64,000 nucleotides of DNA, from IMG/VR virus record IMGVR_UViG_3300042558_003926, positions 1-64,000 of that record; one strand, given 5' to 3'. The position numbers were made by a program, and so were the translations under genes. Below, one piece after another: positions 6,516 through 63,650 of the stretch (position 1 is the first letter of the stretch; every line of letters begins with the position of its first letter). A model generated the notes under the pieces. It was not told the DNA's origin, ran no database searches, and saw only the letters and a list, made by a program, of their open reading frames with translations.

Positions 6516-6546
6516 GGAACTTTAACCCGATAAAAACTATAAAATA
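6516..6546 (+). promoter_or_regulatory. Putative middle (ECF-type) promoter
   Basis: GGAAC-N16-CTATAAAATA upstream of 6559. Confidence 0.55.
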
Positions 6547-6558
6547 AAAAAACAAAAA

Positions 6559-6834
6559 ATGGAAGAAACTATTAAATTGCCAGAAGAATTGGTATTGGAA
6601 GTTCAGGCTCTTAAAGATGAACTGATGGATAATGTTATTAAAGTTGGAAGACTTAGTGTACAGAAATCTTTTTATGAAAAAGATCTTGAAATGATTAACT
6701 CCCAGCTGGATAATCTTCATGACCAAGCCGCTTTAATATACCAGAAGGAGGAGGAATTACAGAAAAAGGTAATCTCCGAATATGGTAACGGTAAACTGGA
6801 TTTTGAGTCCGGTATTTTTACTAAAAACTCCTAA
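6559..6834 (+). CDS. Small coiled-coil hypothetical protein
   Basis: Heptad-rich, ends in EYGNGKLDFESGIFT. Confidence 0.7.
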   Translation: MEETIKLPEELVLEVQALKDELMDNVIKVGRLSVQKSFYEKDLEMINSQLDNLHDQAALIYQKEEELQKKVISEYGNGKLDFESGIFTKNS

Positions 6835-6890
6835 CCTAAACATAAAAAGCTCGTTCTGCTTTAGGTACTATTCTTCCTTTATTTTTTAAG

Positions 6891-6898
6891 GATATATA
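6891..6898 (+). promoter_or_regulatory. Putative late promoter GATATATA
   Basis: Recurrent motif, about 20 nt upstream of the neck gene. Confidence 0.65.
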
Positions 6899-6918
6899 GA
6901 GAAAGTACTTAATGCAGA

Positions 6919-12071: not shown

Positions 12072-12079
12072 GATATATA
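12072..12079 (+). promoter_or_regulatory. Putative late promoter GATATATA
   Basis: Upstream of the sheath gene. Confidence 0.65.
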
Positions 12080-15480: not shown

Positions 15481-15488
15481 GATAAATA
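15481..15488 (+). promoter_or_regulatory. Putative late promoter GATAAATA
   Basis: One mismatch to T4 TATAAATA; 9 nt before the tube gene. Confidence 0.55.
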
Positions 15489-18029: not shown

Positions 18030-18037
18030 AATATATA
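18030..18037 (+). promoter_or_regulatory. Putative late promoter AATATATA
   Basis: Variant of the motif, just before 18043. Confidence 0.45.
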
Positions 18038-19587: not shown

Positions 19588-19621
19588 AATTTTTTTTTCT
19601 CCAGACGTATAGTTACATTTG
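19588..19621 (+). promoter_or_regulatory. Putative early promoter (Bacteroidota primary-sigma type)
   Basis: AAT9CTCC-N11-TACATTTG (matches TAnnTTTG). Confidence 0.6.
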
Positions 19622-19646: not shown

Positions 19647-20213
19647 ATGCGCAAGGAAAAAGCTATTAAGGAGTTTAAGTTTAAAGATCTGTCATTTCTA
19701 GAGGATCGGTTTTTTAATAATTCTAATTGGAGGATTGTAAAATTTACAGATTCTAACGATTTATTTCACTATAGGGTATTTACTTCTGATGATTCTGACC
19801 TTATAATTGATCATAGGAGCGATAAGATATACTTAGAAATGGCGCAAACTTGGGCAAAAAATTCTTACTGCGAAAGAAAAAAAGTAGGTTGCTTGATAGT
19901 AAACAATAGAGCGGTGATTTCGGATGGATATAACGGATCACCTACTGGATTTCCTAATAGGTGTGAAATTAATGATGTAACATTACCTTACGTACTTCAC
20001 GCAGAGGCTAATGCCATAACAAAATTAGCTAGAGGAACTCAAAGTTCAGATGGGTCGGTTTTGTATGTTACTTTATCTCCTTGTTACGAATGTTCAAAAC
20101 TTATTATACAATCTGGTATAAAAAGAGTAGTTTTTAATCAGATTTACAGAAAAACTGAATCGATATCCTTTCTTGCTGAAGCTGGGATAGAGATAATAAA
20201 AATAAATATTTAA
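19647..20213 (+). CDS. dCMP deaminase
   Basis: KKVGCLIV, GYNGSP, HAEANAI, SPCYECSKLIIQSGI. Confidence 0.92.
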   Translation: MRKEKAIKEFKFKDLSFLEDRFFNNSNWRIVKFTDSNDLFHYRVFTSDDSDLIIDHRSDKIYLEMAQTWAKNSYCERKKVGCLIVNNRAVISDGYNGSPTGFPNRCEINDVTLPYVLHAEANAITKLARGTQSSDGSVLYVTLSPCYECSKLIIQSGIKRVVFNQIYRKTESISFLAEAGIEIIKINI

Positions 20214-20220: not shown

Positions 20221-20829
20221 ATGGAGAAAAATATACAGAAACTAGCCGAGGATTTTATGGAGACAAGATCAGATAGAGAATTTCAACCGTTATTTGACAG
20301 ACTTAGACCCGGCGTATTAAATCACTGTTTCCTTATTGTGAAGGAGAACGAATTAGCACAAGATGCTTTTATAAACACAATGGCTAAGATCTGGTTGAAG
20401 ATAGATCAATACGATAAGGAAAGAGGTAATTTTTCAACCTGGTGTTATAACATAGCAAGGAATGAATCTTTACTTTTATTGAAATCAAGAAAAAGATATT
20501 TTTCTCATAATGAATCAGAGCTAGATTTTCTGTCCTCCAAAAATTCAATCGGTGATCTGGGCGGAGTGTATCTTATGGAAGAGGATCCATGTAATTTTAT
20601 ATTTGGCGAGGAAAATAGTGTCGACGAGATATATGAGTCGGTACTCGATGAGATTAGAGATCTACCCGACCTTTATCGGGATATTATGATAGATAGGGAG
20701 ATCAATAATATGAAATATAAGGATATCGCTGAAAAGTACGGGATCAAGAAAAGATCCATAGCAACCCGTATTAGGAGGGCCAGAGGTAAAATCCGTAAAA
20801 AGATGGGCGGGAACAATAAACCCCATTAG
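20221..20829 (+). CDS. ECF-type sigma-70 family RNA polymerase sigma factor
   Basis: Region 2 AQDAFINT..KIW.KIDQYD..RGNFSTWCYNIARN; region 4 helix-turn-helix MKYKDIAEKYGIKKRSIATRIRRARGKIRK. Confidence 0.9.
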   Translation: MEKNIQKLAEDFMETRSDREFQPLFDRLRPGVLNHCFLIVKENELAQDAFINTMAKIWLKIDQYDKERGNFSTWCYNIARNESLLLLKSRKRYFSHNESELDFLSSKNSIGDLGGVYLMEEDPCNFIFGEENSVDEIYESVLDEIRDLPDLYRDIMIDREINNMKYKDIAEKYGIKKRSIATRIRRARGKIRKKMGGNNKPH

Positions 20830-20838
20830 CATATAATA
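20810..20838 (+). promoter_or_regulatory. Putative middle (ECF-type) promoter
   Basis: GGAAC-N16-ATATAATA upstream of 20850. Confidence 0.55.
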
Positions 20839-20849: not shown

Positions 20850-21284
20850 ATGTTTAGGATTTTTAAAGTTATAAAGGAAATACGGCTCTACAGAGAGTAC
20901 ACCAGGATCGTAAAAAAAGAGGAGAAGGATTCTCAAATGTGGAAGAGAAGAAACTTAAGAAGAGACTATTTAAATAGGATTTATACCGTTATCAATCTCC
21001 CCTTACAGGTTCTTGCTTCTGTGGATTTACCTAGGGAATCCAGGCCTTCCTTTGTAGTACAAGAAATAAAACCAATAAACGAATATCTTAAATCCCTTAA
21101 TCTGGAAGAAATTATAACAATGTGGGTAGAGCCAGTTAAGGGGACAGACGAAGAATCATATCTGGTCGTTTATCAATTTCTTTTTAGATATATTACCTGG
21201 CTTTGGATTTTAAGGTTTATTTTGGAGATAGTCCTCATCTCCCTGGCTATTTATTATAGAGGTTTTTTATTTTCTTTCTTCTAA
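20850..21284 (+). CDS. Hypothetical protein with C-terminal transmembrane segment
   Basis: Hydrophobic C-terminus. Confidence 0.65.
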   Translation: MFRIFKVIKEIRLYREYTRIVKKEEKDSQMWKRRNLRRDYLNRIYTVINLPLQVLASVDLPRESRPSFVVQEIKPINEYLKSLNLEEIITMWVEPVKGTDEESYLVVYQFLFRYITWLWILRFILEIVLISLAIYYRGFLFSFF

Positions 21285-21295: not shown

Positions 21296-22099
21296 ATGTC
21301 TGAAGAGTTAATATTATTAAAGAAGAGGGAAATAGAGGAGAAGTTGAGAATCTATGAGGATTCTAACTTTACGTTTCATGAGGAGTCGCATGTTTATAGA
21401 TATTCAGGAGTAAAGTATGATTCAGTTACTACTTTTCTTAAGATATTCAAAGTTCCTTTTGATCGAGAATATTGGTCGAAAAGAAAAGCTGAGGAAAGGG
21501 GAGTGGATGTTTCCGTTATATTAAACGAATGGGAAACTAAGGGGGATGTGTCAAGAAACTTAGGGACTTTAGTCCATAAGTTCATAGAGGACTTTTGGTC
21601 GGGTGAAAATCCGGAAATTCCTGATGATGTGGATGTTAAGGATAGAGTCTTAAAATTTATGGAGGTCTATAATAAAAGACTACATAAGCTAACCCCATTA
21701 AAATCAGAGCTAAAGATATTTTCTAAAAAATGGAGGCTTGCTGGAACAATCGACCAGCCATTACTTTTATTCGATCCATCAACAGAAAGAGTACATTTAA
21801 TAATAGGAGACTGGAAAACCAACGGTGAATTTAAGGATGATAAACACCCTAAGGGGAGATTTAAAAAATTACTCAGACCTTTCAATAATCTATATGAGAA
21901 TGACCATAATGAATATTCAATTCAGATAAGTCTATATCGTCTTATATTAGAGGAGATTGGTATTGAGACCGAGAGCGGGTTCCTTCTTCATTTAGGTCCA
22001 GAGGATCCTAAGATTTACCCAGCTAAGGATCTCAGGGAACCACTAAGAGCATACCTTAATCAAAATAGAACAGAGTTTGATATTTTTAAAATAGATTAG
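21296..22099 (+). CDS. PD-(D/E)XK (RecB-like) exonuclease
   Basis: GTLVHKFIE, SELKIFS, LAGTIDQ, IGDWKT, YSIQISLY. Confidence 0.85.
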   Translation: MSEELILLKKREIEEKLRIYEDSNFTFHEESHVYRYSGVKYDSVTTFLKIFKVPFDREYWSKRKAEERGVDVSVILNEWETKGDVSRNLGTLVHKFIEDFWSGENPEIPDDVDVKDRVLKFMEVYNKRLHKLTPLKSELKIFSKKWRLAGTIDQPLLLFDPSTERVHLIIGDWKTNGEFKDDKHPKGRFKKLLRPFNNLYENDHNEYSIQISLYRLILEEIGIETESGFLLHLGPEDPKIYPAKDLREPLRAYLNQNRTEFDIFKID

Positions 22100-22130
22100 A
22101 AACAAAAACGTAAAGAATAACTAAAAAATA
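22099..22130 (+). promoter_or_regulatory. Putative middle (ECF-type) promoter
   Basis: GAAAC-N17-CTAAAAAATA upstream of 22144. Confidence 0.55.
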
Positions 22131-22746: not shown

Positions 22747-22754
22747 GATATATA
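22747..22754 (+). promoter_or_regulatory. Putative late promoter GATATATA
   Basis: Upstream of 22776. Confidence 0.65.
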
Positions 22755-24911: not shown

Positions 24912-24919
24912 GATATATA
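24912..24919 (+). promoter_or_regulatory. Putative late promoter GATATATA
   Basis: Upstream of 24941; a second AATATATA lies at 24879. Confidence 0.65.
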
Positions 24920-27593: not shown

Positions 27594-27626
27594 GAATGTA
27601 GCTCTAATGGGCTACATTCTTTTTTT
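27594..27626 (+). terminator. Rho-independent terminator
   Basis: GAATGTAGCTC-TAAT-GGGCTACATTC followed by T7. Confidence 0.85.
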
Positions 27627-27656
27627 GAAATCTTTTTCTGTTCTATCAGTAGAATA
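27627..27656 (+). promoter_or_regulatory. Putative middle (ECF-type) promoter driving the late sigma gene
   Basis: GAAAT-N17-GTAGAATA immediately after the terminator. Confidence 0.5.
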
Positions 27657-27692: not shown

Positions 27693-28052
27693 ATGGCTAA
27701 AGATTATGTAAAAAATAGTGAATTGTTGGCCGCGGTAGTGGAATCCAAACAAAAGGGACATTTAACCCCAGATACTATAGAGATGTTTAATCTAATGATA
27801 CACGGGATATCCAAAAAAATGTCATATAAAGATCCGGAAGACAGGGAAGATTGTATGGCCTTTGCCATGGAAGATCTTTGCAAGTATTGGAATAGATTCA
27901 ATCCCGATAAATCGAATAATCCATTTGCTTATTTCACACAAATAGCTAAGAATGGTTTTGCTAAAGGATGGAAGAAAATACATCCACCTAAGAGTCCAAG
28001 AACTATACCTTTTAGCTACATTACAGGAGAGGATAATACATATAACGTATAA
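27693..28052 (+). CDS. Late transcription sigma factor (T4 gp55-like), short
   Basis: YVKNSELL, DREDCM..AME...KYWNRFNPDKSNNPFAYFTQIA matches the gp55 signature. Confidence 0.88.
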   Translation: MAKDYVKNSELLAAVVESKQKGHLTPDTIEMFNLMIHGISKKMSYKDPEDREDCMAFAMEDLCKYWNRFNPDKSNNPFAYFTQIAKNGFAKGWKKIHPPKSPRTIPFSYITGEDNTYNV

Positions 28053-28549: not shown

Positions 28550-29148
28550 GTTTCAAGGATCTAGTTTTAGAATACCGGGATAAGATAGGTACTAATAAAA
28601 ACATCTTCAGGGAGACTGATGAGTATTTTCTAAAAGAGTATTTTAAAAACGATAAGAAATTTCTACCTCAACCGATTTCAATAATACCCGGAAAAATTTA
28701 CTACTTTAATTATTCAACCGATTCTAAAATTACCAAAGAAAGGAAGTTTATAGATAGATTTCCTGTAATTTTATGTACAGATTTTTTTGAAACCGGAGGA
28801 TTTAAAATAATGAAAGGTATAGATCTAGTAACTACCCCAATGAAATACAGAATGGAAATTATAAGCAGAATTTTTGATTCATTCGAGCAGACAATAAAAG
28901 ATAACGGCATTTCCGAATCAGAAGGTGGAATAGCTTCTCCTTTAAATTTAAAGGATTCTGAATTAAATAAAATTTTAGGAGACACCGGATATAAGTCTTC
29001 TCTCTTTGGATTTAAAACGTCTTTCATAAAGAATGCTGGATCGATTATTTATAAGGATTGGTCTAAACTACCCTATCTAACCGTTAATCTGGTCGAGGGG
29101 TTAAATATATCAGGGATATATAGTGAATATGAATCGAAATTAAAATAG
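28546..29148 (+). CDS. DNA end protector (T4 gp2-like)
   Basis: IPGKIYYFNY, DRFPVI; adjacent to the gp4-like gene. Confidence 0.7.
   Translation: MSFKDLVLEYRDKIGTNKNIFRETDEYFLKEYFKNDKKFLPQPISIIPGKIYYFNYSTDSKITKERKFIDRFPVILCTDFFETGGFKIMKGIDLVTTPMKYRMEIISRIFDSFEQTIKDNGISESEGGIASPLNLKDSELNKILGDTGYKSSLFGFKTSFIKNAGSIIYKDWSKLPYLTVNLVEGLNISGIYSEYESKLK
29115..29122 (+). promoter_or_regulatory. Putative late promoter GATATATA
   Basis: Upstream of portal 1, inside the 3' end of the gp2-like gene. Confidence 0.55.
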
Positions 29149-30865: not shown

Positions 30866-32476
30866 ATGGCAGGATTTTTAGATTTTTTAAAACCAAATCA
30901 ATCAGCTTTAGGAAATATCCTAAAGAACCTTTCCAATGTTGCAAAATTTGGAATGCAATATGATGATATGGTTGTTAGAAACTCTCAGGCTATTGGTAAA
31001 ACTGAGGGATATTTTTTCAATCAAGAGAGCACTGGTTTTACTCAAAATGATGCCTTTCAGTGGACCGCTTCCTATCAAGATACCAAGGTAAGAAAATATA
31101 TTGCTTATTTTGACAAGGATTACATCGAGAAAAGAAATTATTTAAGAAAATTTTCTTTAAATGGTGAGATAGAGTTCATTCTAGATACCATAACGGATGA
31201 ATCGATCGTATACGACGATCGTAATTATTTCGCTCAGCCATCTTTTGTTAATCTTGACTTAAAGGACAAGATCAAAGATAAACTTGCTTCGCATTACAAT
31301 AGAATATACAATGTATTTGGATTTCAAAATACAATTCTTGCATGGCAATACTTTAAGCAATTTTTAATTGATGGATTTTTAGCATTTGAAATAATTTACG
31401 ATAACAAAGGAAGAGAGATAATAGGATTTAAGGAACTAGACCCAACCTCACTTCAGCCTGTGGTAGAGAAGGTAGCAGAAAATGAATATAGACAGTTTTG
31501 GATTCAGTACCCGAAGAATCCACAAATGACAAGAAAGCTAACCAATGAGCAGGTGATCTATATTTCTTATGCTAAGGGAAATACCATTTCAAGAGTTAGC
31601 TATATAGAAAGACTGGTTAGATCATACAATATTCTAAGAATAATGGAAAATTCCAGAGTTATCTGGAACGTAATGAATGCTTCCTATCGACTAAAATTCA
31701 TCATACCTATAGGTAGTCAATCTCCGCAAAAAGCCATGCAAACATTAGGACAGTTGATGTCCAATTATAAGGAGGATATTTCTATTAACGATTCTTCTGG
31801 TGAATTAACAATAAACGGAAGACCAAAGGTACAATTTTATAAGAACTATCTCTTTCCTGAAAAAGATGGACAGAGCCCAGATATATCATCTCTTAATTCG
31901 GCAGGTCCAGATTTTAACGTAATGGAGAATGTCGTATATTTTTTCAATAAATTAAAAATGGATTCTAAGATTCCCTATGCTAGATTTGCTTCTAAAAATA
32001 CTACGCCGGGAAATTATCAGACTAGCATAGATCAGCTAGAGAGGGATGAGATAAGATTCGAGAAATTTTTAAGAAGATTAAGATCCATATTCCAGGAGAT
32101 TCTAGTAAAACCCCTCTATATTCAAATGTGTTTAGATTACCCTGAACTATCCAGGGATAAAGGATTCAAAGCAAATATAGGATTAAATTATAATAGAGAT
32201 AGTGAGTTCGAGGAAATGGTAGAACTTGCTGGGTTTACAAAAAGGACCGAGTTTATAAACGGGTTAAAAGAATTGAAAGTTAAAATAGGAGAGGAAGAAA
32301 AAGGATACTTCGATCCGGATTTCTTGATTCAAAGATTCCTAGGCATGAATCCAGACCAGATAAAAATGAATCAAAAGTACAAAGAGAAAGAGGAGAAGGA
32401 GGCAGAAAAAGCTAAAGAAGAAGGTGGAGGAGAAGGCGAAGAATCCGGAGGTGGGGGTCAAACCGTTACTCTATAA
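30866..32476 (+). CDS. Portal protein, paralog 2 (T4 gp20-like)
   Basis: Same motifs, including KIPYARF and RDEIRFEKFLRRLRSIF. Confidence 0.9.
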   Translation: MAGFLDFLKPNQSALGNILKNLSNVAKFGMQYDDMVVRNSQAIGKTEGYFFNQESTGFTQNDAFQWTASYQDTKVRKYIAYFDKDYIEKRNYLRKFSLNGEIEFILDTITDESIVYDDRNYFAQPSFVNLDLKDKIKDKLASHYNRIYNVFGFQNTILAWQYFKQFLIDGFLAFEIIYDNKGREIIGFKELDPTSLQPVVEKVAENEYRQFWIQYPKNPQMTRKLTNEQVIYISYAKGNTISRVSYIERLVRSYNILRIMENSRVIWNVMNASYRLKFIIPIGSQSPQKAMQTLGQLMSNYKEDISINDSSGELTINGRPKVQFYKNYLFPEKDGQSPDISSLNSAGPDFNVMENVVYFFNKLKMDSKIPYARFASKNTTPGNYQTSIDQLERDEIRFEKFLRRLRSIFQEILVKPLYIQMCLDYPELSRDKGFKANIGLNYNRDSEFEEMVELAGFTKRTEFINGLKELKVKIGEEEKGYFDPDFLIQRFLGMNPDQIKMNQKYKEKEEKEAEKAKEEGGGEGEESGGGGQTVTL

Positions 32477-37986: not shown

Positions 37987-38886
37987 ATGATATCCGATAA
38001 TAACCCATTAATTTCTTATTTAGGCATACCTAAAACATGGGCAAGCGAGGGATTTAGAATATCCTCGCATAAGGATCTTTTAAATCTAGTTACCGATCTT
38101 TGTAAGTTCAATTCATCAATTAAGTGCAAATCCGTTTGTATAGATTCGGGGGAGATTGATTTTGATCCATCGGTGTTTAATTCTGTAATAGACGAGACGG
38201 ACAGCGAAACTTCATCTATGCTCTTAGAAATCCAGGAAATAACACGAAGGGAAAATCTTAAGATATATTTTCTAGTTACCAAGGATTATTTTTTAGGAAG
38301 CCAGATCGACAACATTTTCACATCGACAAATAGATTTTTAAGCTTTATTGGAGGATTTCTTGAATCTATTGGTGTTACATATCCTTCCATAATAGTAAGG
38401 GTGGGATCTGCTTACGGGAACAGAAAGGATTCCATGAAGATTTTTTGCGAGAGAGTAAGAAGTCTCGATACTGTAGTTTCTTCCAAGTTGTGCGTTATGA
38501 ATGACGACAAGCCTAGCCTTTTTTCTGTTACTGATCTACTAACTGGAATATACTACGATGCAGGACTTCCTATATGTTTTAGAACATTAGCTCATCATTT
38601 TAATGACGGCGGATTAACCATAAGGGAAGCTCTATATTTGGCTTCAACTACTTGGACTGAAGGTAATTCACCACTAATGATCCATTCGGAATCCAGGGAT
38701 ATTAACAGCGACGGGATTTTTCTTAGTCCTCTTCCCTCTGATGAATTAACTATGAGGATTCCAACATTCGGTCTCCGCTGTGAAATTATCTTAGACTCTC
38801 TGGGAAAGGAACTATCATACATTAATTATTTAAAAAACCATAAGGCTTTACCCCCTATTGTTATTAACAGAATATCCGGGAAATAA
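37987..38886 (+). CDS. UV-damage endonuclease (UvsE/UVDE) homolog with degenerate metal sites
   Basis: MNDDKPSLFSVTDL, HHFNDGGL...EAL.LA..TW and HSESR follow the UVDE pattern. Confidence 0.7.
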   Translation: MISDNNPLISYLGIPKTWASEGFRISSHKDLLNLVTDLCKFNSSIKCKSVCIDSGEIDFDPSVFNSVIDETDSETSSMLLEIQEITRRENLKIYFLVTKDYFLGSQIDNIFTSTNRFLSFIGGFLESIGVTYPSIIVRVGSAYGNRKDSMKIFCERVRSLDTVVSSKLCVMNDDKPSLFSVTDLLTGIYYDAGLPICFRTLAHHFNDGGLTIREALYLASTTWTEGNSPLMIHSESRDINSDGIFLSPLPSDELTMRIPTFGLRCEIILDSLGKELSYINYLKNHKALPPIVINRISGK

Positions 38887-38917
38887 TTTTTTATCCCGGT
38901 GATTTTAATTATCTTTA
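38885..38917 (+). promoter_or_regulatory. Putative early promoter (Bacteroidota type)
   Basis: AATTTTTTATCCC-N12-TATCTTTA. Confidence 0.55.
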
Positions 38918-39648: not shown

Positions 39649-39685
39649 AAAGCTTTTCTTTGATATATAGAGAAAAGCTTTTTTT
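39649..39685 (+). terminator. Terminator-like hairpin whose loop holds a late promoter (GATATATA, 39662-39669)
   Basis: AAAGCTTTTCT-TTGATATATAG-AGAAAAGCTTT-TTTT, directly followed by the GTG start. Confidence 0.7.
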
Positions 39686-43243: not shown

Positions 43244-43251
43244 GATATATA
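43244..43251 (+). promoter_or_regulatory. Putative late promoter GATATATA
   Basis: Upstream of the protease/capsid operon. Confidence 0.7.
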
Positions 43252-47088: not shown

Positions 47089-47118
47089 AAAACCCTAGGC
47101 TCAGCCTAGGGTTTTTTT
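47089..47118 (+). terminator. Rho-independent terminator after the capsid gene
   Basis: AAAACCCTAGGC-TCA-GCCTAGGGTTTTTTT. Confidence 0.9.
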
Positions 47119-47128: not shown

Positions 47129-47136
47129 GATATATA
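47129..47136 (+). promoter_or_regulatory. Putative late promoter GATATATA
   Basis: Supports a start at 47161 rather than 47125. Confidence 0.65.
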
Positions 47137-49225: not shown

Positions 49226-49475
49226 TTTTTATGATTTCATGAACGAGGACGATAGCGAAAAAACTAAAGTTCAACAGATAAAGTTAGATCTTGCTAAAAA
49301 GTTTGATGCAATAGGGATTGCTAAAAATGAAAAAAAGCCAGACGATATCAATTCAGAGATTAAGAGTATAGATAAGCAAGCAGCTCTTTATTTGGAGATT
49401 TCCAACATGATGAAATTATTATCTGCGGAAATTAAGAAAGCTGGTACCACTAAAAAATCAACCAATATATACTAA
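49218..49475 (+). CDS. Small putative internal head protein
   Basis: MLSFYDFMNE leader. Confidence 0.55.
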   Translation: MLSFYDFMNEDDSEKTKVQQIKLDLAKKFDAIGIAKNEKKPDDINSEIKSIDKQAALYLEISNMMKLLSAEIKKAGTTKKSTNIY

Positions 49476-49483: not shown

Positions 49484-51994
49484 ATGAAAAATCCTTATTT
49501 AAATAATCTAGTAGCTAGCAGAATATTCGAAGGTCACTATACAAAACTATTCGAAAATGAGAAAGTTGATTCTCTAGCAAGCAAGCTAGCTGACAATGCT
49601 CTTAATGTTTTTAAGGTATTAACTTTCGATCTTGCTCCTAAAAGGGATAGAAACCCTGATGTTATTAGGGTTAAGTTATCAGATATTGCTAATTCGGATA
49701 GCGTTAAACAAATGACTGCTAAGCTACTTGATTATGCCGACGATAATGAATTGGTTAATGCTAAATACGCTGAATCTAAAAGACTCTATCTTGAGTGTTT
49801 AAAAAAGCTATGTGATGCTTTAGAAAGAATAGCGGAGATAAGCAAGGAAAAAGGAGAGACGATTATTAAAGGATTTAAGCTATCCCCTACCAAATTACAG
49901 AACATCATAGATAATATAGCAAAACAAGCAGAGGAAGAAACTAAGCTTAAAGCTGCTAATGAATCTGATCTATATGATTACTATGAGGATATTAACGAAT
50001 CTATTTTAGTTGGGTACAGAGGCAGAATAGAAAAAATCAAGAAGCTATTAACCAACCTTATTACTTCCGCTGAAGGAAAGGACCAGAAAAATGGATACGG
50101 AAGGGACTGGAAAAGAACTTTTATAGACCTTGACGAGAAAAGAAAAGTATTAGATATAACTAGATCGGGATTCGGTGAAAAGGACAAGAAAACTCTAGAT
50201 GACCTAGAAAAGCAGGTAACTAAATACCAAACGGAATTTAATGATGCCCTTTTGCAGGCTGCTAATAGATCTCTACAATCACTAGAAGACGACGAGGAGG
50301 TTTATAAACTCTATTCCGATGTAACTGAGCTTGCAACCGAGGCTTTGGATCTACTTACTAGAGCAAAATCCCAGTATGAAATAGCATACAAAGAAATCTT
50401 AGATCAGCACGAAGTTGAGGAGAGCACATTCCTTAAATCTCTATTCCCACTAAAAAGAGGAGACAAAGATACTAATCCTAAAATAAAAGGAAGCAATTTG
50501 ATATATTCCATTCAACTTGCTTTATGTCACGGTATCCCATCTGCTGATAAGCTTATTAAATCTAAAAAAGGACCTAATGGTATTTATGGACCGGCAACTA
50601 CTGCTGTGGTAGCCAGTCTTCAAAAATTATCGGGGAATAAAAATACAAACGGTCAGCTTGACAAGGCTCTTCTAGATTCAATTTTAGCCTCTGATTGGGT
50701 TCAAGTAAAAGACAAGAAAGCGATCGAGAGTGCTTTAGAAATAATTAGATCAAAGACCAACGAGTCCGAATTCTATGGGTATCAGGATAACGTGATGAGC
50801 ATGGATTATTTTCTATCGATTAATGAAAGCAAGATCGTTATAAACAATTCAGAATTTGAGAAGGAGCTTACTTCTCAATATAAAACGGCTTCCGCTGCTC
50901 CTAGCACGGAGGGATCTTCTAAAGGGTCTTCATCTTCTAAAAAAAATGCTGGCTCTAGTGTTAAGGAATTAGCTAAAAAACTTAGAACCGTTTATGGTAT
51001 GAAAATAGAATCTGACGATTTTGTTAAGACCGACGGGACACTGAAATCATCATATACCCCCGGGTTTGTAAGTGCATGGACAAAAGCAATAGATAAAGTA
51101 GGGGAATCTGCTAAAGAATACGGATACTTCTTTTATGATGGCGGACTATATCCTATTAAAAGTAAATACTCTTCTCTGAAAAGACCAAGCAATTGGGAAA
51201 AATGGTCTGTTGTCAGACAAGCAAAATCATTTAATTCTGAGGATGCCTCGGACTTTCTATCTGATTATATGAAATCATGGAAAAGTTTTGGTAAGGTTAA
51301 AGGGGAGGAAAGATACCAGGCAATCAAATCTATTATCAAAAAGAGAGGGGATTCCGATTTAGCAACAGCATATGAATTGATGGACTCTTCAATTCTAAAT
51401 AAAAGCATACCCTATATTGACTTTGATGATCTAAAAGGAAATATCACCAAGGCATTTAATATAGCCCTACAGAAGGGAGAAAAATCCCCAGATCTAGGAG
51501 CTGAAGATTTTTGTGCAGTCAACGATTTCCTTATTATGATTTCTAGTGCAGTTTCTTTCGATGGCAAGAAATTTATAAGCTGTGTTAAATGGATACATGA
51601 CCATGTTCTGGGAGAGGTTACAGCTAAGAGAATAGCTAATGATTCTATTATATTCCTTAAGACTGGAGGTTTCTCCGGTGTAGACGAGATTCTTTCCTAT
51701 AATAGTACAGGTATAATTCTTAGAGACGTAACCACCAAATCTGGAATAAAATCTTTAATCGACAGAGTAAGAAAATTAATTCTAAAGGATCCTACTAAGG
51801 ACTTACCCGGATTTAAGTATCTTATAGACATGGATGATGACGACGATCTAGGAAAAAGTACTCTTTCTTTGAATTGTAAATACATTGCGTGTGAGATTTA
51901 TCCAATAGTAAATTCTCACGTAAAAAGGATGAATGCAAATTCCTTCGAAAAAGTTCCGCAGTCTAAATTCGGCAAGTGCGTAGATATTAGCTAA
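49484..51994 (+). CDS. Large putative virion protein with degenerate peptidoglycan-binding domain
   Basis: PLKRGDKD...IYSIQLAL...NGIYGPATTAVVASLQ...NGQLD; repeated xNES sites; AATATATA at 49464. Confidence 0.6.
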   Translation: MKNPYLNNLVASRIFEGHYTKLFENEKVDSLASKLADNALNVFKVLTFDLAPKRDRNPDVIRVKLSDIANSDSVKQMTAKLLDYADDNELVNAKYAESKRLYLECLKKLCDALERIAEISKEKGETIIKGFKLSPTKLQNIIDNIAKQAEEETKLKAANESDLYDYYEDINESILVGYRGRIEKIKKLLTNLITSAEGKDQKNGYGRDWKRTFIDLDEKRKVLDITRSGFGEKDKKTLDDLEKQVTKYQTEFNDALLQAANRSLQSLEDDEEVYKLYSDVTELATEALDLLTRAKSQYEIAYKEILDQHEVEESTFLKSLFPLKRGDKDTNPKIKGSNLIYSIQLALCHGIPSADKLIKSKKGPNGIYGPATTAVVASLQKLSGNKNTNGQLDKALLDSILASDWVQVKDKKAIESALEIIRSKTNESEFYGYQDNVMSMDYFLSINESKIVINNSEFEKELTSQYKTASAAPSTEGSSKGSSSSKKNAGSSVKELAKKLRTVYGMKIESDDFVKTDGTLKSSYTPGFVSAWTKAIDKVGESAKEYGYFFYDGGLYPIKSKYSSLKRPSNWEKWSVVRQAKSFNSEDASDFLSDYMKSWKSFGKVKGEERYQAIKSIIKKRGDSDLATAYELMDSSILNKSIPYIDFDDLKGNITKAFNIALQKGEKSPDLGAEDFCAVNDFLIMISSAVSFDGKKFISCVKWIHDHVLGEVTAKRIANDSIIFLKTGGFSGVDEILSYNSTGIILRDVTTKSGIKSLIDRVRKLILKDPTKDLPGFKYLIDMDDDDDLGKSTLSLNCKYIACEIYPIVNSHVKRMNANSFEKVPQSKFGKCVDIS

Positions 51995-52026
51995 TTTTTT
52001 AGTCCCGTTTATCTTTATTATATTTG
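51993..52026 (+). promoter_or_regulatory. Putative early promoter (Bacteroidota type)
   Basis: AATTTTTTAGTCCC-N12-TATATTTG. Confidence 0.6.
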
Positions 52027-52032: not shown

Positions 52033-52062
52033 GAAATCTATAGTGGTTTCTGCAATATAATT
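52033..52062 (+). promoter_or_regulatory. Putative middle (ECF-type) promoter
   Basis: GAAAT-N17-ATATAATT, in tandem with the early promoter. Confidence 0.45.
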
Positions 52063-54068: not shown

Positions 54069-54076
54069 GATATATA
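54069..54076 (+). promoter_or_regulatory. Putative late promoter GATATATA
   Basis: Upstream of 54096. Confidence 0.65.
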
Positions 54077-55912: not shown

Positions 55913-55952
55913 TATATATTTAACCTTTGAAAAAATCATTACTGGATATATA
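55913..55952. promoter_or_regulatory. Divergent putative late promoters
   Basis: AATATATA on the minus strand (55913-55920) and GATATATA on the plus strand (55945-55952). Confidence 0.55.
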
Positions 55953-57377: not shown

Positions 57378-57408
57378 GAAACATTTTACTAGTTTCAAGC
57401 TACAAATA
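57378..57408 (+). promoter_or_regulatory. Putative middle (ECF-type) promoter
   Basis: GAAAC-N17-CTACAAATA; another GAAAC-N17-CTAAAAC lies at 57661. Confidence 0.55.
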
Positions 57409-57411: not shown

Positions 57412-57696
57412 ATGGATCTGAATGCTGATTTTCAATTAAATCACGGTGAGATAATAATAATGTCTAAGGTCAAAGGATTTACGGTGATTGAATTAAAAAG
57501 GCACACTGACCCTATCTTGGATAATATAGTAGAGGTTTGGCAATATGATAACAGAAAGAAAACTGCCAAGTCTAAGGGAGAATCTAGTTGGATTATACTC
57601 AAGGATTTACCCTGTCACTTAAGATATTATAAAAGTTTAGGATTTAATCAGATCTCATTGGAAACAAAAGACCAGAAAAAATCTAAAACGAAATAA
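57412..57696 (+). CDS. Hypothetical protein
   Basis: 94-aa ORF. Confidence 0.55.
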   Translation: MDLNADFQLNHGEIIIMSKVKGFTVIELKRHTDPILDNIVEVWQYDNRKKTAKSKGESSWIILKDLPCHLRYYKSLGFNQISLETKDQKKSKTK

Positions 57697-61453: not shown

Positions 61454-61463
61454 AATAATTACG

Positions 61464-62054
61464 ATGGGACTTTTACTTATAGACACATTAAAAAAGAACA
61501 AGTCAGTATTTAATCCAGAACCAGGACTGGATTCTAGCAAATATGGTATTTGGGACTTAACGAAATCATCGATCACCTATAATAACTTGGATATAAAAAT
61601 AGACGATTTCTTTTTTGTCAAGGATATCTATCAAATGAGACCTGATCTTATTGCTGCTATTAAATTAGGGGATCAAGCCAAGGTTGGGTCTTTACTAAAA
61701 ATAAACGGAATAAGTAATCCGTTTGCATTAAAAGAGGGCAGATTTATTCTTATCCCATCAGACAATACTGTTGAAAGATCTTTTGATATTAAAAAAATCA
61801 AAAATCAGGCTTCTACATCCTCTAACACCAACACAAACCCTAACGAGGCTTTCAGAAAAAATCAGGAACAAAAGAAATTCAAGGTTTCTGATGGCAGAAA
61901 AAAATTCTTAGCTAGCAAAGTCAAAAATCAACCTGAGATGGTTCTTCCGCCTAACGTCATGCAGCCAAGCCAAAGATCTATTCTTAAGAAAGATGGATTC
62001 CTCATCTTTGCACCAGATGCTGGAGGCGGAGGATCTAATAAACCTTCTAACTAA
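61464..62054 (+). CDS. Baseplate wedge LysM-like protein (gp53-like)
   Basis: MRPDLIA...LLKINGISNPFALKEGRFILIP. Confidence 0.7.
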   Translation: MGLLLIDTLKKNKSVFNPEPGLDSSKYGIWDLTKSSITYNNLDIKIDDFFFVKDIYQMRPDLIAAIKLGDQAKVGSLLKINGISNPFALKEGRFILIPSDNTVERSFDIKKIKNQASTSSNTNTNPNEAFRKNQEQKKFKVSDGRKKFLASKVKNQPEMVLPPNVMQPSQRSILKKDGFLIFAPDAGGGGSNKPSN

Positions 62055-62062
62055 TTTTTTAA

Positions 62063-63616
62063 ATGACAGTAGATTCGACTAAAATAGTAACTCTGGCTCT
62101 TAATAATATGAAGCTGGATGAGTTAGTTCAGAACGACAGGACTAATGGTTCTAATAACCCGGATACACAGAGAGAACTAGGCGCTGGTCAGGATAAATCA
62201 ACTGGTCTCAATTCACCCTTCATGTCGATCAATGGGTATAGTGTATCTAAGTATCTGGATTCGTTTTCTTTGGATCTTAGCGGATTTCTACCAATAATAA
62301 GATTTTCCTTTACGCCGACCGAAACTGTGTTCATATCAGTAAACTACCCTAAGGACGGTGACATAGTTTCCACTTATATGAGATCCCCTGGTGATTTCTA
62401 TAATCCCCTGAGAATGGATTTCAAAGTTCTAAGTGTTTCTGGTGATGTTTCAAGTAAGTATTCACCAAGCGGAACAGATTCTAATGGCACTACGTTTAGA
62501 TTTCACATAGTTGCCGAAGCTTATATTCCGGGGTTATATTCCCCGAAGATTAAGTCTTTCAGTAAAATGAATTCAGCAGATGTTTTATTAGACGTTTCTC
62601 AGGAATTAAATCTTGGATTTGCAACAAACGAGAAAACAACTAATGACTCTATGACGTGGATATGTCCTAATTATTCATATTATGACTTTATCCAGGAGGT
62701 TTGTCTTAGATCGTACAAGGACGACGAGCAAAGTTTTTTTGACTGCTGGATAGATCCATATTACAATCTGAACTTCGTAAACATGGGAAGTCAATTTGCT
62801 TTCGAAGGTGACCCTAAGCAGGAGGTTCTTATTATTCCTGGATATGCAGACGGTGGTCTAAAAATGGATTCAGCTATTCCAGGAACTCCAACCCCAAGTC
62901 CAGCTAAAGTACCATTAGTAATAACCAACGCAATAGGAGCCGGTGTTACCCCCTTTTTCATAAATGGATACACGCTAACCTCAAGAGCAGGGAATAATAC
63001 CAATGAGTTTGGCTACATAACGGAGGTTGGCTTTTATGACGAAGAATCAGAGGAGGGAGGTTTAGATGGCAAATATGTTAAATATGAGATAGAAACGCAA
63101 ACAACGGATAATGTAAGACCCGGAGCTATACTTCAAAAAGGAAGAGCTAGAGATAATGAATACAAAAACGAAACGAGAAGGGAATGGTTTGGTGTTCTGA
63201 ATTATTCCCCTGACTTAAACGATGGGGTTCATCAGAACTATTATCATGCTACTGTTCAGAATACTATAAATATTAGCGATGTTTCTAAAATGACTTTGGA
63301 AGTAGAGCTTTCCTCGTATTTTCCTGGAATTATAAGAGGAATGGTTTTACCTGTTTCTATTTATGTTTTCGACGGTGGATTAAGACAGCAGAATTCAGGG
63401 AATCTCTCCAATAAAGATAAGAATACAGGACTCAATCCAACCATCGATAACTTCCTATCTGGAAGTTATGTTGTTACCGGAATGGAGGTTTATTGGTCTA
63501 AGTTTTCAGGTGGAATGAAGCAGAAACTTTCTCTATCTAAAAGGACGTGGACTGCTAACTCTTCCGGAACTATTCCGAAGGCTTTCCCTATTTCTATTCA
63601 AACGGGACAATTCTAG
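62063..63616 (+). CDS. Putative baseplate hub protein (gp27-like)
   Basis: Follows the gp53-like gene; C-terminal FLSGSYVVTGMEVYW...QKLSLSKR pattern. Confidence 0.55.
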   Translation: MTVDSTKIVTLALNNMKLDELVQNDRTNGSNNPDTQRELGAGQDKSTGLNSPFMSINGYSVSKYLDSFSLDLSGFLPIIRFSFTPTETVFISVNYPKDGDIVSTYMRSPGDFYNPLRMDFKVLSVSGDVSSKYSPSGTDSNGTTFRFHIVAEAYIPGLYSPKIKSFSKMNSADVLLDVSQELNLGFATNEKTTNDSMTWICPNYSYYDFIQEVCLRSYKDDEQSFFDCWIDPYYNLNFVNMGSQFAFEGDPKQEVLIIPGYADGGLKMDSAIPGTPTPSPAKVPLVITNAIGAGVTPFFINGYTLTSRAGNNTNEFGYITEVGFYDEESEEGGLDGKYVKYEIETQTTDNVRPGAILQKGRARDNEYKNETRREWFGVLNYSPDLNDGVHQNYYHATVQNTINISDVSKMTLEVELSSYFPGIIRGMVLPVSIYVFDGGLRQQNSGNLSNKDKNTGLNPTIDNFLSGSYVVTGMEVYWSKFSGGMKQKLSLSKRTWTANSSGTIPKAFPISIQTGQF

Positions 63617-63650
63617 AAATTAGGATAAATATGAAAAATAAAATAACCTT

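What the first reader, a model, noticed from the sequence alone, without database searches (positions are those of the whole stretch)
6516..63631. Three promoter classes outline a host sigma -> phage ECF sigma -> gp55-like sigma cascade in a T4-like phage
Seen, class I: AATTTTTT..TCC(C)-N11/12-TAnnTTT(G/A) at 19588, 32475, 38885 and 51993, before the dCMP deaminase plus ECF sigma, ligase, exonuclease and kinase/AsnB genes. Class II: G(A/G)AA(C/T)-N16/17-nTAnAA at 6516, 20810, 22099, 27627, 33853, 37950, 52033, 57378 and 57661, including before the gp55-like gene and the clamp loader. Class III: (G/A)ATA(T/A)ATA at 6891, 12072, 15481, 18030, 22747, 24912, 29115, 39662, 43244, 47129, 54069, 55945 and 63624, before structural or putative virion genes. 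Known: TAnnTTTG is the Bacteroidota -7 element, a -35 AAC is the ECF hallmark, and T4 gp55 reads TATAAATA. T4 uses MotA/AsiA for middle genes, whereas SPO1 uses a sigma cascade. Inference: each sigma gene is preceded by the promoter of the previous tier. A terminator at 27594 insulates the late-sigma gene from upstream read-through.
Basis: partly seen in the sequence, partly recalled or inferred. Interest (0 to 1): 0.78.

Follow-up and report, generated by a model that had tools for sequence, protein, structure and literature searches.

The report
Sigma-factor relay in a jumbo phage
An uncultured 290-kb lake phage, probably of Bacteroidota, has three sharply defined promoter types wired so that a host-type promoter drives a phage ECF-type sigma factor gene and an ECF-type promoter drives a T4-gp55-like late sigma factor gene; this gene-timing relay is conserved in relatives but has not been tested experimentally.

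Summary
All 26 listed sites exist. Each class is strongly over-represented, in sense only, in the 90 nt before gene starts. Window counts against shuffle means are I 4/0.0, II 14/1.5 and III 13/2.2; whole-genome counts are 40/0.4, 41/7.4 and 65/10.3.

- **Class I:** T-run + TCC(C/T), N12-13, then TAnnTTT(G/A), matching the Bacteroidota -7 box.
- **Class II:** (T)GAAA(C/T), N18, then TAnAA, with a sharp spacing peak.
- **Class III:** (G/A)ATATATA with nothing conserved in the 45 nt upstream, as in T4 late promoters.

Class III precedes sheath, tube, portal and protease/capsid genes. Classes I and II precede DNA-metabolism genes.

The 202-aa sigma is ECF-type (closest solved structure SigW). The 119-aa sigma's only PDB match is T4 gp55. 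The wiring holds: class I precedes the ECF sigma operon, and class II precedes the gp55-like gene. That class II site is invariant in 41 of 43 distinct relatives while the spacer varies.

It appears accessory, because two relatives that lack it keep all three classes. A Chryseobacterium phage without the ECF-like sigma lacks class II. Which sigma reads which class, and the timing, remain inferred.

The parts
19588..19621 (+). Class I promoter (T-run, TCC, N10, TACATTTG) before the dCMP deaminase + ECF sigma operon
   Evidence: A class I site lies at the same place in relatives G001-G004.
19647..20213 (+). dCMP deaminase gene, first gene of the operon that holds the ECF-like sigma
   Evidence: Pfam dCMP_cyt_deam_1, E = 9.5e-25.
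20221..20829 (+). ECF-type (group 4) sigma factor, 202 aa
   Evidence: Pfam Sigma70_r2 + r4_2. NCBIfam TIGR02937 sigma70-ECF, 69 bits against a cut-off of 42.9; best subfamily Sig70_bacteroi1. Best solved structure is B. subtilis SigW 5wuq, E = 2.4e-9, full length.
20810..20837 (+). Class II promoter (GGAAC-N17-TATAAT) inside the 3' end of the sigma gene, driving the next gene
   Evidence: GAAAC-N18-TATAAA lies at the same place in G001, G002 and G003.
20850..21284 (+). 144-aa protein with a hydrophobic C-terminal segment, directly after the ECF sigma; unknown function, possible anti-sigma
   Evidence: Translation. No Pfam, PHROG or NCBIfam match. The anti-sigma role is inference only.
6516..6543 (+). 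Class II promoter (GGAAC-N17-TATAAA) before a 91-aa acidic ORF (6559-6834)
22099..22127 (+). Class II promoter (GAAAC-N18-TAAAAA) before ORF 22144-22683
27594..27626 (+). Intrinsic terminator (9-bp stem, 8-nt loop, T7) ending the upstream late unit, directly before the class II promoter
   Evidence: Hairpin plus T-run present in most of 43 relatives, with different stem sequences that still pair.
27627..27655 (+). Class II promoter (GAAAT-N18-TAGAAT) of the gp55-like sigma gene
   Evidence: 41 of 43 distinct relatives carry GAAA(T/C)-N18-TA..., with about 2.0 bits at G, A, A, A and at the -10 T and A positions, while the spacer varies.
27693..28052 (+). gp55-like late sigma factor, 119 aa, sigma region 2 only
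   Evidence: Pfam Sigma70_r2, E = 7.5e-6. The only PDB hit is T4 gp55 7d7c_F, E = 1.5e-4, residues 4-97 against 9-114. T4 gp55 finds it in the genome at E = 2.5e-6. tblastn hits in 439 phage records, mostly Synechococcus and other cyanophage records.
32475..32508 (+). Class I promoter before the ATP-dependent DNA ligase gene (32522-33853)
33853..33881 (+). Class II promoter before the gp44-like clamp-loader gene (33886-34830)
   Evidence: Pfam AAA/Gp44_lid. T4 gp44 phmmer E = 5.5e-23.
37950..37978 (+). Class II promoter (GAAAC-N18-TATAAT) before the UvdE-like endonuclease gene (37987-38886)
38885..38917 (+). Class I promoter before the exonuclease gene (38922-39623)
51993..52026 (+). Class I promoter before the P-loop kinase / AsnB-like genes
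52033..52061 (+). Class II promoter (GAAAT-N18-TATAAT) in tandem with the class I site, ending about 5 nt before the probable true start ATG at 52066
57378..57406 (+). Class II promoter before ORF 57412-57696
57661..57689 (+). Class II promoter before ORF 57699-58337
3745..3752 (+).
6891..6898 (+). Class III promoter (GATATATA) before the 829-aa head-closure-like gene and the terminase operon
12072..12079 (+). Class III promoter before the tail sheath gene
15481..15488 (+). Class III variant (GATAAATA) before the tail tube gene
18030..18037 (+). Class III variant (AATATATA) before a tape-measure-like gene
22747..22754 (+). Class III promoter after the terminator at 22696-22722, before ORFs 22776-24862
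24912..24919 (+). Class III promoter before the 876-aa protein with a peptidoglycan-binding domain
29115..29122 (+). Class III promoter inside the end of the preceding gene, 48 nt before the first portal gene
39662..39669 (+). Class III promoter before ORFs 39686-43208
43244..43251 (+). Class III promoter of the prohead protease + major capsid unit
   Evidence: RNA contigs cover about 43,320-47,080, with none in 42,901-43,300.
47093..47118 (+). Intrinsic terminator after the major capsid gene
   Evidence: Sequence. RNA-contig depth falls to zero after about 47,100 in 3 of 4 runs.
47129..47136 (+). Class III promoter directly after that terminator
49464..49471 (+).
54069..54076 (+). Class III promoter before ORF 54096-54746
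55913..55920 (-). Class III variant (AATATATA) on the minus strand, 27 nt before the window's only minus-strand gene (55164-55886)
55945..55952 (+). Class III promoter, divergent from the previous one, about 19 nt before an ATG at about 55971
63624..63631 (+). Class III variant (GATAAATA) before ORF 63651-65963

Best explanation
The window is the first 64 kb of a complete 289,651-bp genome of an uncultured, distantly T4-like jumbo phage from lake water. Its host is most likely a member of Bacteroidota. The phage has no RNA polymerase of its own and appears to re-programme the host core enzyme with its own sigma factors.

Step 1 (inferred). The host primary sigma reads about 40 class I promoters: T-run + TCC(C/T), N12-13, then the Bacteroidota-type -7 box TAnnTTT(G/A). 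These drive small early genes, some DNA-metabolism genes, the dCMP-deaminase + ECF-type sigma operon and, in this genome, a third RpoD-like sigma.

Step 2 (inferred). The ECF-type sigma reads about 30-40 class II promoters, (T)GAAA(C/T)-N18-TAnAA(T). From memory, this geometry matches B. subtilis SigW promoters. Class II drives replication and repair genes: clamp loader, a clamp candidate, gp32-like SSB, DNA polymerase, thymidylate synthase and UvdE. It also drives the gene next to the sigma gene and the gp55-like sigma gene. A terminator shields the gp55-like gene from upstream read-through.

Step 3 (inferred). The 119-aa gp55-like sigma reads about 65 class III promoters, (G/A)ATATATA. These have a -10 element only, as T4 late promoters do. 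They sit 5-30 nt before virion and other late genes.

Shown here: the motifs, their placement, the gene identities, the wiring and its conservation. Inferred: which sigma reads which class, and the timing.
For: Genome context:
- One contig, CheckV 100% complete, no RNA polymerase beta-prime match.

Motif reality:
- Shuffle, antisense and spacing controls all pass.
- The same three classes occur in five related genomes.

Function:
- The first gene behind class III is structural in 7 of 7 annotated cases.
- Behind classes I and II it is structural in 0 of 18 (Fisher p = 2e-6).
- Class III has no conserved base in the 45 nt upstream.

Sigma identities.

Wiring and conservation:
- Class II before the gp55-like gene is present in 41 of 43 distinct relatives, with invariant boxes and a variable spacer.
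- Class I before the ECF sigma operon, and class II directly after it, occur in G001-G003. G004 shows the class I site only.

Natural variation:
- G001 and G006 carry only the ECF-like and gp55-like sigmas, yet keep classes I, II and III.
- Chryseobacterium phage MA9V-2 has a gp55-like sigma but no ECF-like sigma. It shows no N18 peak and no class II site before its gp55-like gene.

Host clues:
- The -7 box matches TANNTTTG (PMC6847099).
- Only 10 of 344 genes have GGAG/GAGG upstream, and adenine peaks at -12/-11. The same paper describes both as Bacteroidetes traits.

Other:
- Canonical TTGACA/TATAAT sites are not enriched (63 found against 70.7 expected).
- RNA contigs from four metatranscriptomes cover only the stretch between the class III site at 43244 and the terminator near 47,100.
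Against: - There is no transcription start or time-course evidence. The RNA data are assembled contigs without ends, partly from related strains.
- A third sigma of Bacteroidota primary-sigma type lies outside the window, and no promoter class could be assigned to it.
- Class I lacks a clear -33 TTTG, and about half its -7 boxes end in A. G at that position is nearly invariant in Flavobacterium johnsoniae.
- The class II -10 box (TAnAAT) resembles a housekeeping -10 more than the CGT of typical ECF promoters.
- Unlike typical ECF sigmas, this one is not preceded by its own promoter type.
- No gp33 homologue was found, and no Pfam gp45 match. The clamp candidate is a lead only.
- MA9V-2 is distant, so the absence of class II there may simply reflect divergence.
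- Lak and LR756500 phages carry homologues of all three sigmas, but no class II site is visible before their gp55-like genes.
Confidence: 0.6

Rival explanations
1. The three motifs are promoters, but the programme is not a strict linear relay. Classes I and II could both act early or overlap in time, like 'early' and 'delayed early' sets. The ECF-like sigma would then boost or prolong expression of DNA-metabolism genes rather than define a separate middle phase.
For: Both classes precede DNA-metabolism genes. The kinase gene has class I and class II in tandem. Both early sigma genes share class I.
Against: The gp55-like gene has only a class II promoter and is shielded by a terminator. That arrangement is conserved across 41 of 43 relatives, which argues for a dependent step.
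Confidence: 0.2
2. Class II is read by something other than the ECF-like sigma. Candidates are the phage RpoD-like sigma (279788-280690), a host alternative sigma, or host primary sigma helped by an unrecognised activator, as with T4 MotA/AsiA.
For: The -10 box TAnAAT resembles the housekeeping TATAAT. The RpoD-like sigma is also behind a class I promoter and differs from a Bacteroidota sigma in regions 2.4 and 4.2.
Against: G001 and G006 lack the RpoD-like sigma but keep the N18 peak. No AsiA or MotA match was found. The GAAAC -35 box and the spacing fit ECF promoters (SigW consensus recalled from memory; closest structure SigW). MA9V-2 lacks both the ECF-like sigma and class II.
Confidence: 0.12
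3. Class I is not read by the host primary sigma alone. Its conserved T-run/TCC(C/T) element might recruit a phage factor (a virion-delivered protein or the RpoD-like sigma). In that case the first tier would also be phage-controlled.
For: TCC/CCG at about -25 is not part of the described host consensus. Half the -7 boxes end in A.
Against: Genomes without the RpoD-like sigma keep class I. Neither the A/G ratio nor the leader motif tracks that sigma. A sigma behind its own promoter class cannot start the programme unless it is packaged in the virion.
Confidence: 0.1
4. The motifs are not promoters. They could instead be RNA-level signals near start codons, such as processing or translation elements, or copies of duplicated gene cassettes.
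For: Class III often lies only 5-8 nt from the start codon. Many class I sites sit in a repetitive array of small genes at 253-269 kb.
Against: Classes I and II are two-block motifs with fixed spacing and variable spacers. The sites follow terminators. They occur before unrelated genes on both strands, and match the known element types of three sigma families.
Confidence: 0.04

Closest known systems
T4 late transcription (gp55 sigma with gp33 co-activator and gp45 sliding clamp; late promoter TATAAATA)
   Same: The 119-aa protein is a detectable gp55 homologue. Class III is an 8-bp A/T element with nothing conserved upstream. It drives virion genes. A clamp loader and a clamp candidate are present.
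   Different: The consensus is (G/A)ATATATA rather than TATAAATA. The protein is 119 aa against 185 aa and lacks T4 residues about 115-170. No gp33 homologue was found, and no Pfam gp45 match. Whether the clamp activates late transcription here is unknown.
Bacillus phage SPO1 sigma cascade (host sigma A, then gp28, then gp33/34)
   Same: The logic matches: early genes from host-type promoters include a phage sigma, which switches on middle genes and the late sigma (PMC13401047 abstract; remainder from my own knowledge).
   Different: The sigma families differ (an ECF-type and a gp55-type). The host phylum, the promoter sequences and the T4-like virion and replication modules also differ.
T4 middle mode (MotA activator + AsiA sigma appropriation)
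   Same: It has the same place in the programme, switching on replication genes after the early phase.
   Different: No AsiA or MotA homologue was found. A complete alternative sigma seems to take that role.
ECF sigma factors of bacteria, closest B. subtilis SigW (-35 TGAAAC, N16, CGTA, from my own knowledge), and the ECF-annotated sigma of phiEco32-like phages
   Same: The domain make-up is sigma-2 plus sigma-4 only. The protein scores above the cut-off for the ECF superfamily model. The best structural relative is SigW. The class II -35 box GAAAC and the distance to the TA of the -10 box equal the SigW consensus. A phage ECF-annotated sigma is listed among middle gene products of SU10, a phiEco32 relative (PMC4281155).
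   Different: The -10 box is TAnAAT, not CGT. There is no autoregulatory promoter and no recognisable anti-sigma. The sigma acts in a T4-like jumbo phage upstream of a gp55-type sigma.
Bacteroidota primary-sigma promoters (-33 TTTG / -7 TANNTTTG)
   Same: Class I carries TAnnTTT(G/A), mostly with non-G at the two variable positions, as in the refined TAHHTTTG.
   Different: It has a T-run plus TCC(C/T)/CCG instead of a TTTG at -33. About half of the sites end in A.
'Group 2' jumbo phages of Iyer et al. 2021 (PMC7824862), including Prevotella Lak-B8 and Tenacibaculum PTm1
   Same: These have no phage RNA polymerase, and they carry both a minimal sigma and an RpoD-like sigma. Lak and LR756500 records hold homologues of all three sigmas.
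   Different: The passages I read from that paper, found by term search, list the proteins but describe no promoter classes or wiring. Those passages name only two sigma types, minimal and RpoD-like, not an ECF-type one.

Membership tests
ECF (group 4) sigma factor [202-aa protein, 20221-20829] | Only sigma regions 2 and 4; matches the ECF family models | tested here: met
   Pfam r2 + r4_2. TIGR02937, 69 bits against a cut-off of 42.9. Full-length match to SigW and SigE structures.
ECF (group 4) sigma factor [202-aa protein, 20221-20829] | Target promoters with an 'AAC' -35 box and fixed spacing | tested here: inconclusive
   Class II GAAA(C/T)-N18-TAnAA fits. Its link to this sigma rests only on co-occurrence.
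ECF (group 4) sigma factor [202-aa protein, 20221-20829] | Co-transcribed cognate anti-sigma factor | tested here: inconclusive
   The next gene encodes a 144-aa protein with a C-terminal hydrophobic segment but no family match. It has its own class II promoter.
ECF (group 4) sigma factor [202-aa protein, 20221-20829] | Positive autoregulation from its own promoter type | tested here: not met
   The operon is preceded by class I, not class II, here and in G001-G004.
T4 gp55-type late sigma [119-aa protein, 27693-28052] | Sequence homology to gp55; region-2-like domain only | tested here: met
   The only PDB hit is gp55 7d7c_F, E = 1.5e-4. T4 gp55 phmmer E = 2.5e-6. Pfam r2 only.
T4 gp55-type late sigma [119-aa protein, 27693-28052] | Late promoters consisting of a single -10-region A/T octamer without a -35 element, before virion genes | tested here: met
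   Class III: 65 upstream regions against 10.3 in shuffles. No conserved base in the 45 nt upstream. Structural genes lie downstream. The link to this protein is inferred.
T4 gp55-type late sigma [119-aa protein, 27693-28052] | gp33 co-activator | tested here: inconclusive
   No phmmer hit with T4 gp33, and none among about 30 ORFs scanned with PHROGs. Iyer et al. report gp33 orthologues in group 2 jumbo phages.
T4 gp55-type late sigma [119-aa protein, 27693-28052] | Sliding clamp (gp45) and a clamp-binding C-terminal tail on the sigma | tested here: inconclusive
   Pfam gp45 models find nothing. The 254-aa ORF at genome 138080-138844 resembles PCNA/gp45 clusters in the Atlas (0.91-0.97). The tail ...SPRTIPFSYITGEDN... 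only loosely resembles T4 ...SPSLDFLYEAND.
Bacteroidota primary-sigma promoter [class I] | -7 element TANNTTTG | tested here: met
   41 sites with TAnnTTT(G/A). Consensus from PMC6847099. About half end in A.
Bacteroidota primary-sigma promoter [class I] | -33 element TTTG | tested here: not met
   A T-run followed by TCC(C/T)/CCG occupies that region. The cited paper notes that the -33 element is weak in F. johnsoniae as well.
Bacteroidota primary-sigma promoter [class I] | Start site 4-5 nt after the -7 element; dependence on host holoenzyme | not testable with these tools
   Only assembled RNA contigs were available.
Phage sigma cascade (SPO1 type) | Each sigma gene lies behind a promoter of the previous tier | tested here: met
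Phage sigma cascade (SPO1 type) | Sequential timing of the classes and dependence on the sigmas | not testable with these tools
   The virus is uncultured and there are no time-course data.
T4 MotA/AsiA middle mode | AsiA and MotA homologues | tested here: not met
   Pfam PF09010 and PF09114 give no match in the genome.

The most novel reading that the evidence does not exclude
A large clade of environmental, probably Bacteroidota-infecting jumbo phages (267 IMG/VR stretches encoding a gp55-like relative, the best 80 at 82-100% identity) has replaced the T4 MotA/AsiA middle switch with an ECF-type sigma. The result is a two-step phage sigma relay: an ECF-type sigma, then a truncated gp55-type sigma. 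Each step has a fully readable promoter code: GAAAC-N18-TAnAAT, then GATATATA with a -10 element only. The relay may be damped by a membrane-anchored protein encoded next to the ECF sigma. The larger genomes of the clade add a diverged copy of the host's primary sigma, whose target is still unknown.
Probability: 0.5. Interest if true: 0.65.

Novelty: new variant of a known kind. Interest (0 to 1): 0.58.

Why it matters
Phage gene timing is understood in detail for only a few model phages. None of them infects Bacteroidota, whose transcription and translation signals differ from the textbook ones.

If the relay holds, it gives a directly testable regulatory map for an abundant group of freshwater jumbo phages: about 140 predicted promoters, three sigma factors and several terminators. 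It would also show that the T4-type late system can be coupled to an ECF-type sigma instead of MotA/AsiA.

It would supply orthogonal sigma/promoter pairs that might be useful as genetic parts in Bacteroidota. The unassigned third sigma and the conserved TCC element of class I are concrete open questions.

Tried and rejected
1. An iterative position-weight matrix for class II drifted into the A-rich leaders before start codons and was abandoned. Spacing controls and shuffles were used instead.
2. Megablast of 14 kb against GenBank phages found nothing.
3. The one scan of bacterial genomes with the third sigma used poorly conserved peptides. It gave only 5 weak hits. One of them led to a Rikenellaceae MAG, whose own 295-aa sigma served for comparison.
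4. Idea: the RpoD-like sigma reads the class I sub-type that carries the AACCAATTAAA leader. Rejected: the leader occurs only in this genome (20 copies, 19 forward, at 249-269 kb). It is absent from G002 and occurs only 3 times in G003, both of which have that sigma.
5. Idea: the RpoD-like sigma explains -7 boxes ending in A. Rejected: the A/G ratio does not follow presence of that sigma.
6. A fourth motif among 47 unassigned intergenic regions: none seen by eye. Many of these regions are mis-called ORFs or tRNA regions.
7. Class II before the gp55-like genes of LR756500 and Lak-B5: not recognisable.
8. A shared clamp-binding tail among all proteins of the genome: none found.
9. T4 gp45, gp62 and gp33 by phmmer: no hits.
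10. RNA evidence: only Logan contigs were available. They bound the protease-capsid unit but give no transcript ends.
11. A crude count of inverted repeats flanking the T-run of class I returned 0 of 41. It examined only 14 nt of left flank, so it does not settle the hairpin examples seen by eye.

Full report
**What the window is**

The window is bases 1-64000 of a single 289,651-bp virus record that CheckV rates 100% complete. GC content is 37%. A crude ORF call gives about 395 genes, 84% of them on the plus strand. No tRNA lies in the window.

The genome comes from lake-water metagenomes. It has no close relative among GenBank phages at the DNA level.

The gene content is distantly T4-like:
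- tail sheath, tail tube, two portal paralogues, prohead protease, major head protein and large terminase;
- gp44-like clamp loader;
- gp32-like SSB and family B DNA polymerase;
- a DNA-end protector.

No RNA polymerase beta-prime match was found. This fits 'group 2' of the jumbo phages of Iyer et al. (PMC7824862). That group has no phage RNA polymerase and carries both minimal and RpoD-like sigmas. It includes the Bacteroidetes phages Lak-B8 and PTm1.

**Checking the observation**

De novo 8-mer counting in the 80 nt before all ORFs recovered the motifs without prior input:
- GATATATA: 46 of 58 genomic copies lie in sense before a start (16-fold enrichment).
- TTATCCCG: 9.6-fold enrichment.

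For class II the most telling control is spacing. G[AG]AA[CT]-Nx-TA.AA within 45 nt of a start occurs 27 times at N18 and 10 times at N17. At every other spacing from 12 to 23 it occurs 0-6 times.

Dinucleotide-preserving shuffles of each upstream region gave the following counts of upstream regions with a match.

| Class | Window, observed / shuffle mean | Genome, observed / shuffle mean |
|---|---|---|
| I | 4 / 0.0 | 40 / 0.4 |
| II | 14 / 1.5 | 41 / 7.4 |
| III | 13 / 2.2 | 65 / 10.3 |

Antisense counts were near background.

One nuance: the raw number of RATATATA octamers in the window (20) is not above whole-window shuffles (18.3). The signal lies in strand (19 of 20 on the coding strand, p = 4e-5) and in position.

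Canonical TTGACA/TATAAT sites are not enriched (63 found against 70.7 expected).

**Refined consensus**

- **Class I:** AATTTTTTTA-TCC(C/T)-N12/13-TAnnTTT(G/A), a median of 23 nt before the start codon.
- **Class II:** (T)GAAA(C/T)-N18 (sometimes N17)-TAnAA(T), a median of 16 nt before the start.
- **Class III:** (G/A)ATATATA, rarely GATAAATA, with no conserved base in the 45 nt upstream. It sits 5-30 nt before the start, so a quarter of these genes would have very short or no leaders.

**Function of the genes behind each class**

- **Class III:** the first annotated genes are all structural. They are head-closure-like (with the terminase operon), sheath, tube, tape-measure-like, a peptidoglycan-binding 876-aa protein, portal, and protease + capsid.
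- **Class II**: clamp loader, UvdE-like nuclease, the gp55-like sigma, gp32-like SSB, DNA polymerase, thymidylate synthase, an RNA-ligase/cytidylyltransferase protein, a P-loop kinase and a probable sliding clamp.
- **Class I**: dCMP deaminase + ECF sigma, DNA ligase, an exonuclease, kinase/AsnB, the third sigma, and a dense array of small genes at 250-268 kb.

Structural against non-structural is 7/0 for class III and 0/18 for classes I and II together (Fisher p = 2e-6). Classes I and II do not differ clearly in function.

**The sigma factors**

*The 202-aa protein (20221-20829)* has regions 2 and 4 only.
- It passes the ECF superfamily model, and its best subfamily is a Bacteroidetes one.
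- Its closest solved structure is B. subtilis SigW over the full length.
- From my own knowledge, the SigW consensus is TGAAAC-N16-CGTA. That places GAAAC exactly 18 nt from the TA, as in class II.

*The 119-aa protein (27693-28052)* has region 2 only.
- Its sole PDB match is T4 gp55.
- T4 gp55 retrieves it from the genome.
- tblastn finds relatives in 439 phage records, mostly Synechococcus and other cyanophage records.
- It lacks about 65 residues of T4 gp55. It ends in a tail that only loosely resembles the clamp-binding end of gp55.

*A third sigma lies outside the window* at 279788-280690 on the minus strand.
- It is 300 aa, with regions 1.2 to 4.2, and is RpoD/RpoS-like.
- It is 37% identical to a 295-aa sigma of a Rikenellaceae MAG. 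The two share the N-terminus MRQ(F/L)KI but diverge in regions 2.4 and 4.2.
- It has its own class I promoter, with a perfect TAACTTTG box.

**Wiring and its conservation**

The ECF sigma operon is preceded by class I. The gp55-like gene is preceded by a terminator and then class II.

In IMG/VR, 267 stretches encode a relative of the gp55-like protein, and the best 80 loci were kept (82-100% identity). They give 43 distinct upstream sequences.
- 41 carry GAAA(T/C)-N18-TA..., and the other two carry the N17 form.
- Information content is about 2.0 bits at G, A, A, A and at the -10 T and A positions, while the spacer varies freely.
- In four of the 41 (L061, L076, L085, L086) the match lies 63-108 nt upstream and may be spurious.
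- In most of these relatives the preceding hairpin keeps pairing with different stem sequences.

In G001-G004 a class I site precedes the deaminase-sigma operon. In G001-G003 a GAAAC-N18-TATAAA site sits at the end of the sigma gene and drives the next gene. The RpoD-like sigma of G002 and G003 is also behind a class I site.

**Natural variation as a test**

Among relatives, every record that spans the region has the ECF-like and gp55-like genes 7-8 kb apart. The RpoD-like gene was found only in the genomes of about 290 kb or more, plus one 73%-complete record.

G001 (271 kb, 99% complete) and G006 (250 kb, 92% complete) have only the two sigmas. They still show class I (23 and 15 sites), the class II N18 peak (22 sites each) and class III (58 and 44 sense sites against 14 and 9 antisense). 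With two phage sigmas and three classes, the assignment host / ECF-like / gp55-like is the simplest one.

Chryseobacterium phage MA9V-2 has a gp55-like sigma and another sigma but no ECF-like one. It shows no spacing peak, no class I of this form and no GATATATA enrichment. Its gp55-like gene is not behind a GAAAC-N18 site. This phage is distant, so the point is weak.

**Host**

- The -7 box equals the Bacteroidetes TANNTTTG (PMC6847099).
- Only 10 of 344 genes have GGAG/GAGG before the start.
- Adenine peaks at -12/-11 (0.66 and 0.64). The same paper describes both traits for this phylum.
- Homologues of the sigmas occur in Prevotella (Lak), Chryseobacterium and Tenacibaculum phages.

**RNA**

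Many freshwater metatranscriptomes hold the capsid region. Contigs of four runs cover about 43,320-47,080 only. Nothing covers 42,901-43,300, and depth is zero beyond about 47,100 in three of the four runs.

This is what a unit running from the class III site at 43244 to the terminator at 47093-47118 would give. However, contigs carry no transcript ends, and many stem from related strains.

**Mechanism, rivals and limits**

The best-supported reading is the relay given under 'best explanation'. Three things remain open.
1. No start-site or timing data exist.
2. The role of the RpoD-like sigma is unknown. Two ideas for it were tested and rejected.
3. Class I has a conserved T-run/TCC element that is not part of the host consensus, and half its boxes end in A.

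No AsiA or MotA is detectable. No gp33 homologue was found. A clamp candidate exists.

**Novelty**

Already known:
- phage sigma cascades (SPO1);
- gp55-type late promoters;
- an ECF-annotated sigma in phiEco32-like phages;
- several sigmas in group 2 jumbo phages.

Five literature searches found no description of these promoter classes. Nor did they find an ECF-type sigma placed upstream of a gp55-type sigma. I therefore class this as a new variant of a known kind.

Noticed in passing
outside the window: genome 279788-280690 (-), locus L001:970-1872: Third phage sigma factor, 300 aa, RpoD/RpoS-like and of Bacteroidota primary-sigma type (37% identical to a Rikenellaceae MAG sigma, same MRQxKI N-terminus). 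It is behind a class I promoter. It was found in the relatives of about 290 kb or more (plus one 73%-complete record), and is absent from G001 and G006. Its target promoters are unknown.
   Followed up: partly
outside the window: genome about 249-269 kb: Twenty copies (19 on the forward strand) of AACCAATTAAA. In the class I sites listed it lies about 8 nt after the -7 box and 7-12 nt before the start codon of small genes, so it is a repeated leader or operator-like element. It is specific to this genome: absent from G002 and present at only 1-3 copies in G001 and G003.
   Followed up: partly
window 29170-30843 and 30866-32476: Two adjacent portal-protein paralogues, both matching phrog_213 (E = 3e-56 and 1.5e-67).
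   Followed up: no
window 20850-21284: 144-aa protein directly after the ECF sigma gene, with a hydrophobic C-terminal segment. Its own class II promoter is conserved in G001-G003. It could be an anti-sigma or a feedback component, but it matches no family.
   Followed up: partly
window 6559-6834: 91-aa acidic protein behind a class II promoter, belonging to a widespread family of small viral proteins (Atlas clusters at 0.95). Its C-terminus, ...KLDFESGIF..., recalls the clamp-binding ends of T4 gp33 (...TLDFLL) and gp55 (...SLDFLYEAND). This is only a lead for a gp33 analogue.
   Followed up: partly
outside the window: genome 138080-138844 (L090:14080-14844): 254-aa protein behind a class II promoter that resembles PCNA/gp45 sliding-clamp clusters in the ESM Atlas (scores 0.91-0.97). 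The neighbours of its best hit are clamp folds (TM 0.76-0.83). The Pfam gp45 models miss it.
   Followed up: partly
window 28064-28549: TnsA-like endonuclease (Pfam E = 2.8e-18) directly after the gp55-like sigma gene, followed by a DNA-end-protector-like gene (28546-29148).
   Followed up: no
genome-wide, e.g. 241539, 269424, 272525, 287121 (outside the window); window 3745, 18030: About a quarter of class III octamers end only 5-8 nt before the start codon. These late mRNAs would therefore have little or no leader.
   Followed up: no
outside the window: e.g. genome 254949 and 260534; G001 252163: In some class I sites the TCCCGGG element pairs with a complementary stretch upstream of the T-run, and T's follow it. 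A terminator hairpin and the next promoter therefore overlap. A crude count that examined only 14 nt of left flank found none, so the frequency is unknown.
   Followed up: no
window 52024-52635: The longest-ORF start (TTG at 52024) lies inside the class I -7 box. The likely true start is ATG at 52066 (MIYVFEGARNSGKT..., a P-loop), only about 5 nt after a class II -10 box. The gene thus has tandem class I and class II promoters.
   Followed up: yes
outside the window: genome about 147.0 kb and 168.8 kb: tRNA-like sequences (T-arm motifs GGTTCGAxxCC) seen in intergenic regions. The window itself has no tRNA.
   Followed up: no
outside the window: genome 122918-124324: The family B DNA polymerase ORF behind a class II promoter is only 468 aa. 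Only its first 361 aa were scanned with Pfam, and these matched the exonuclease domain. The polymerase may be split into two genes.
   Followed up: no
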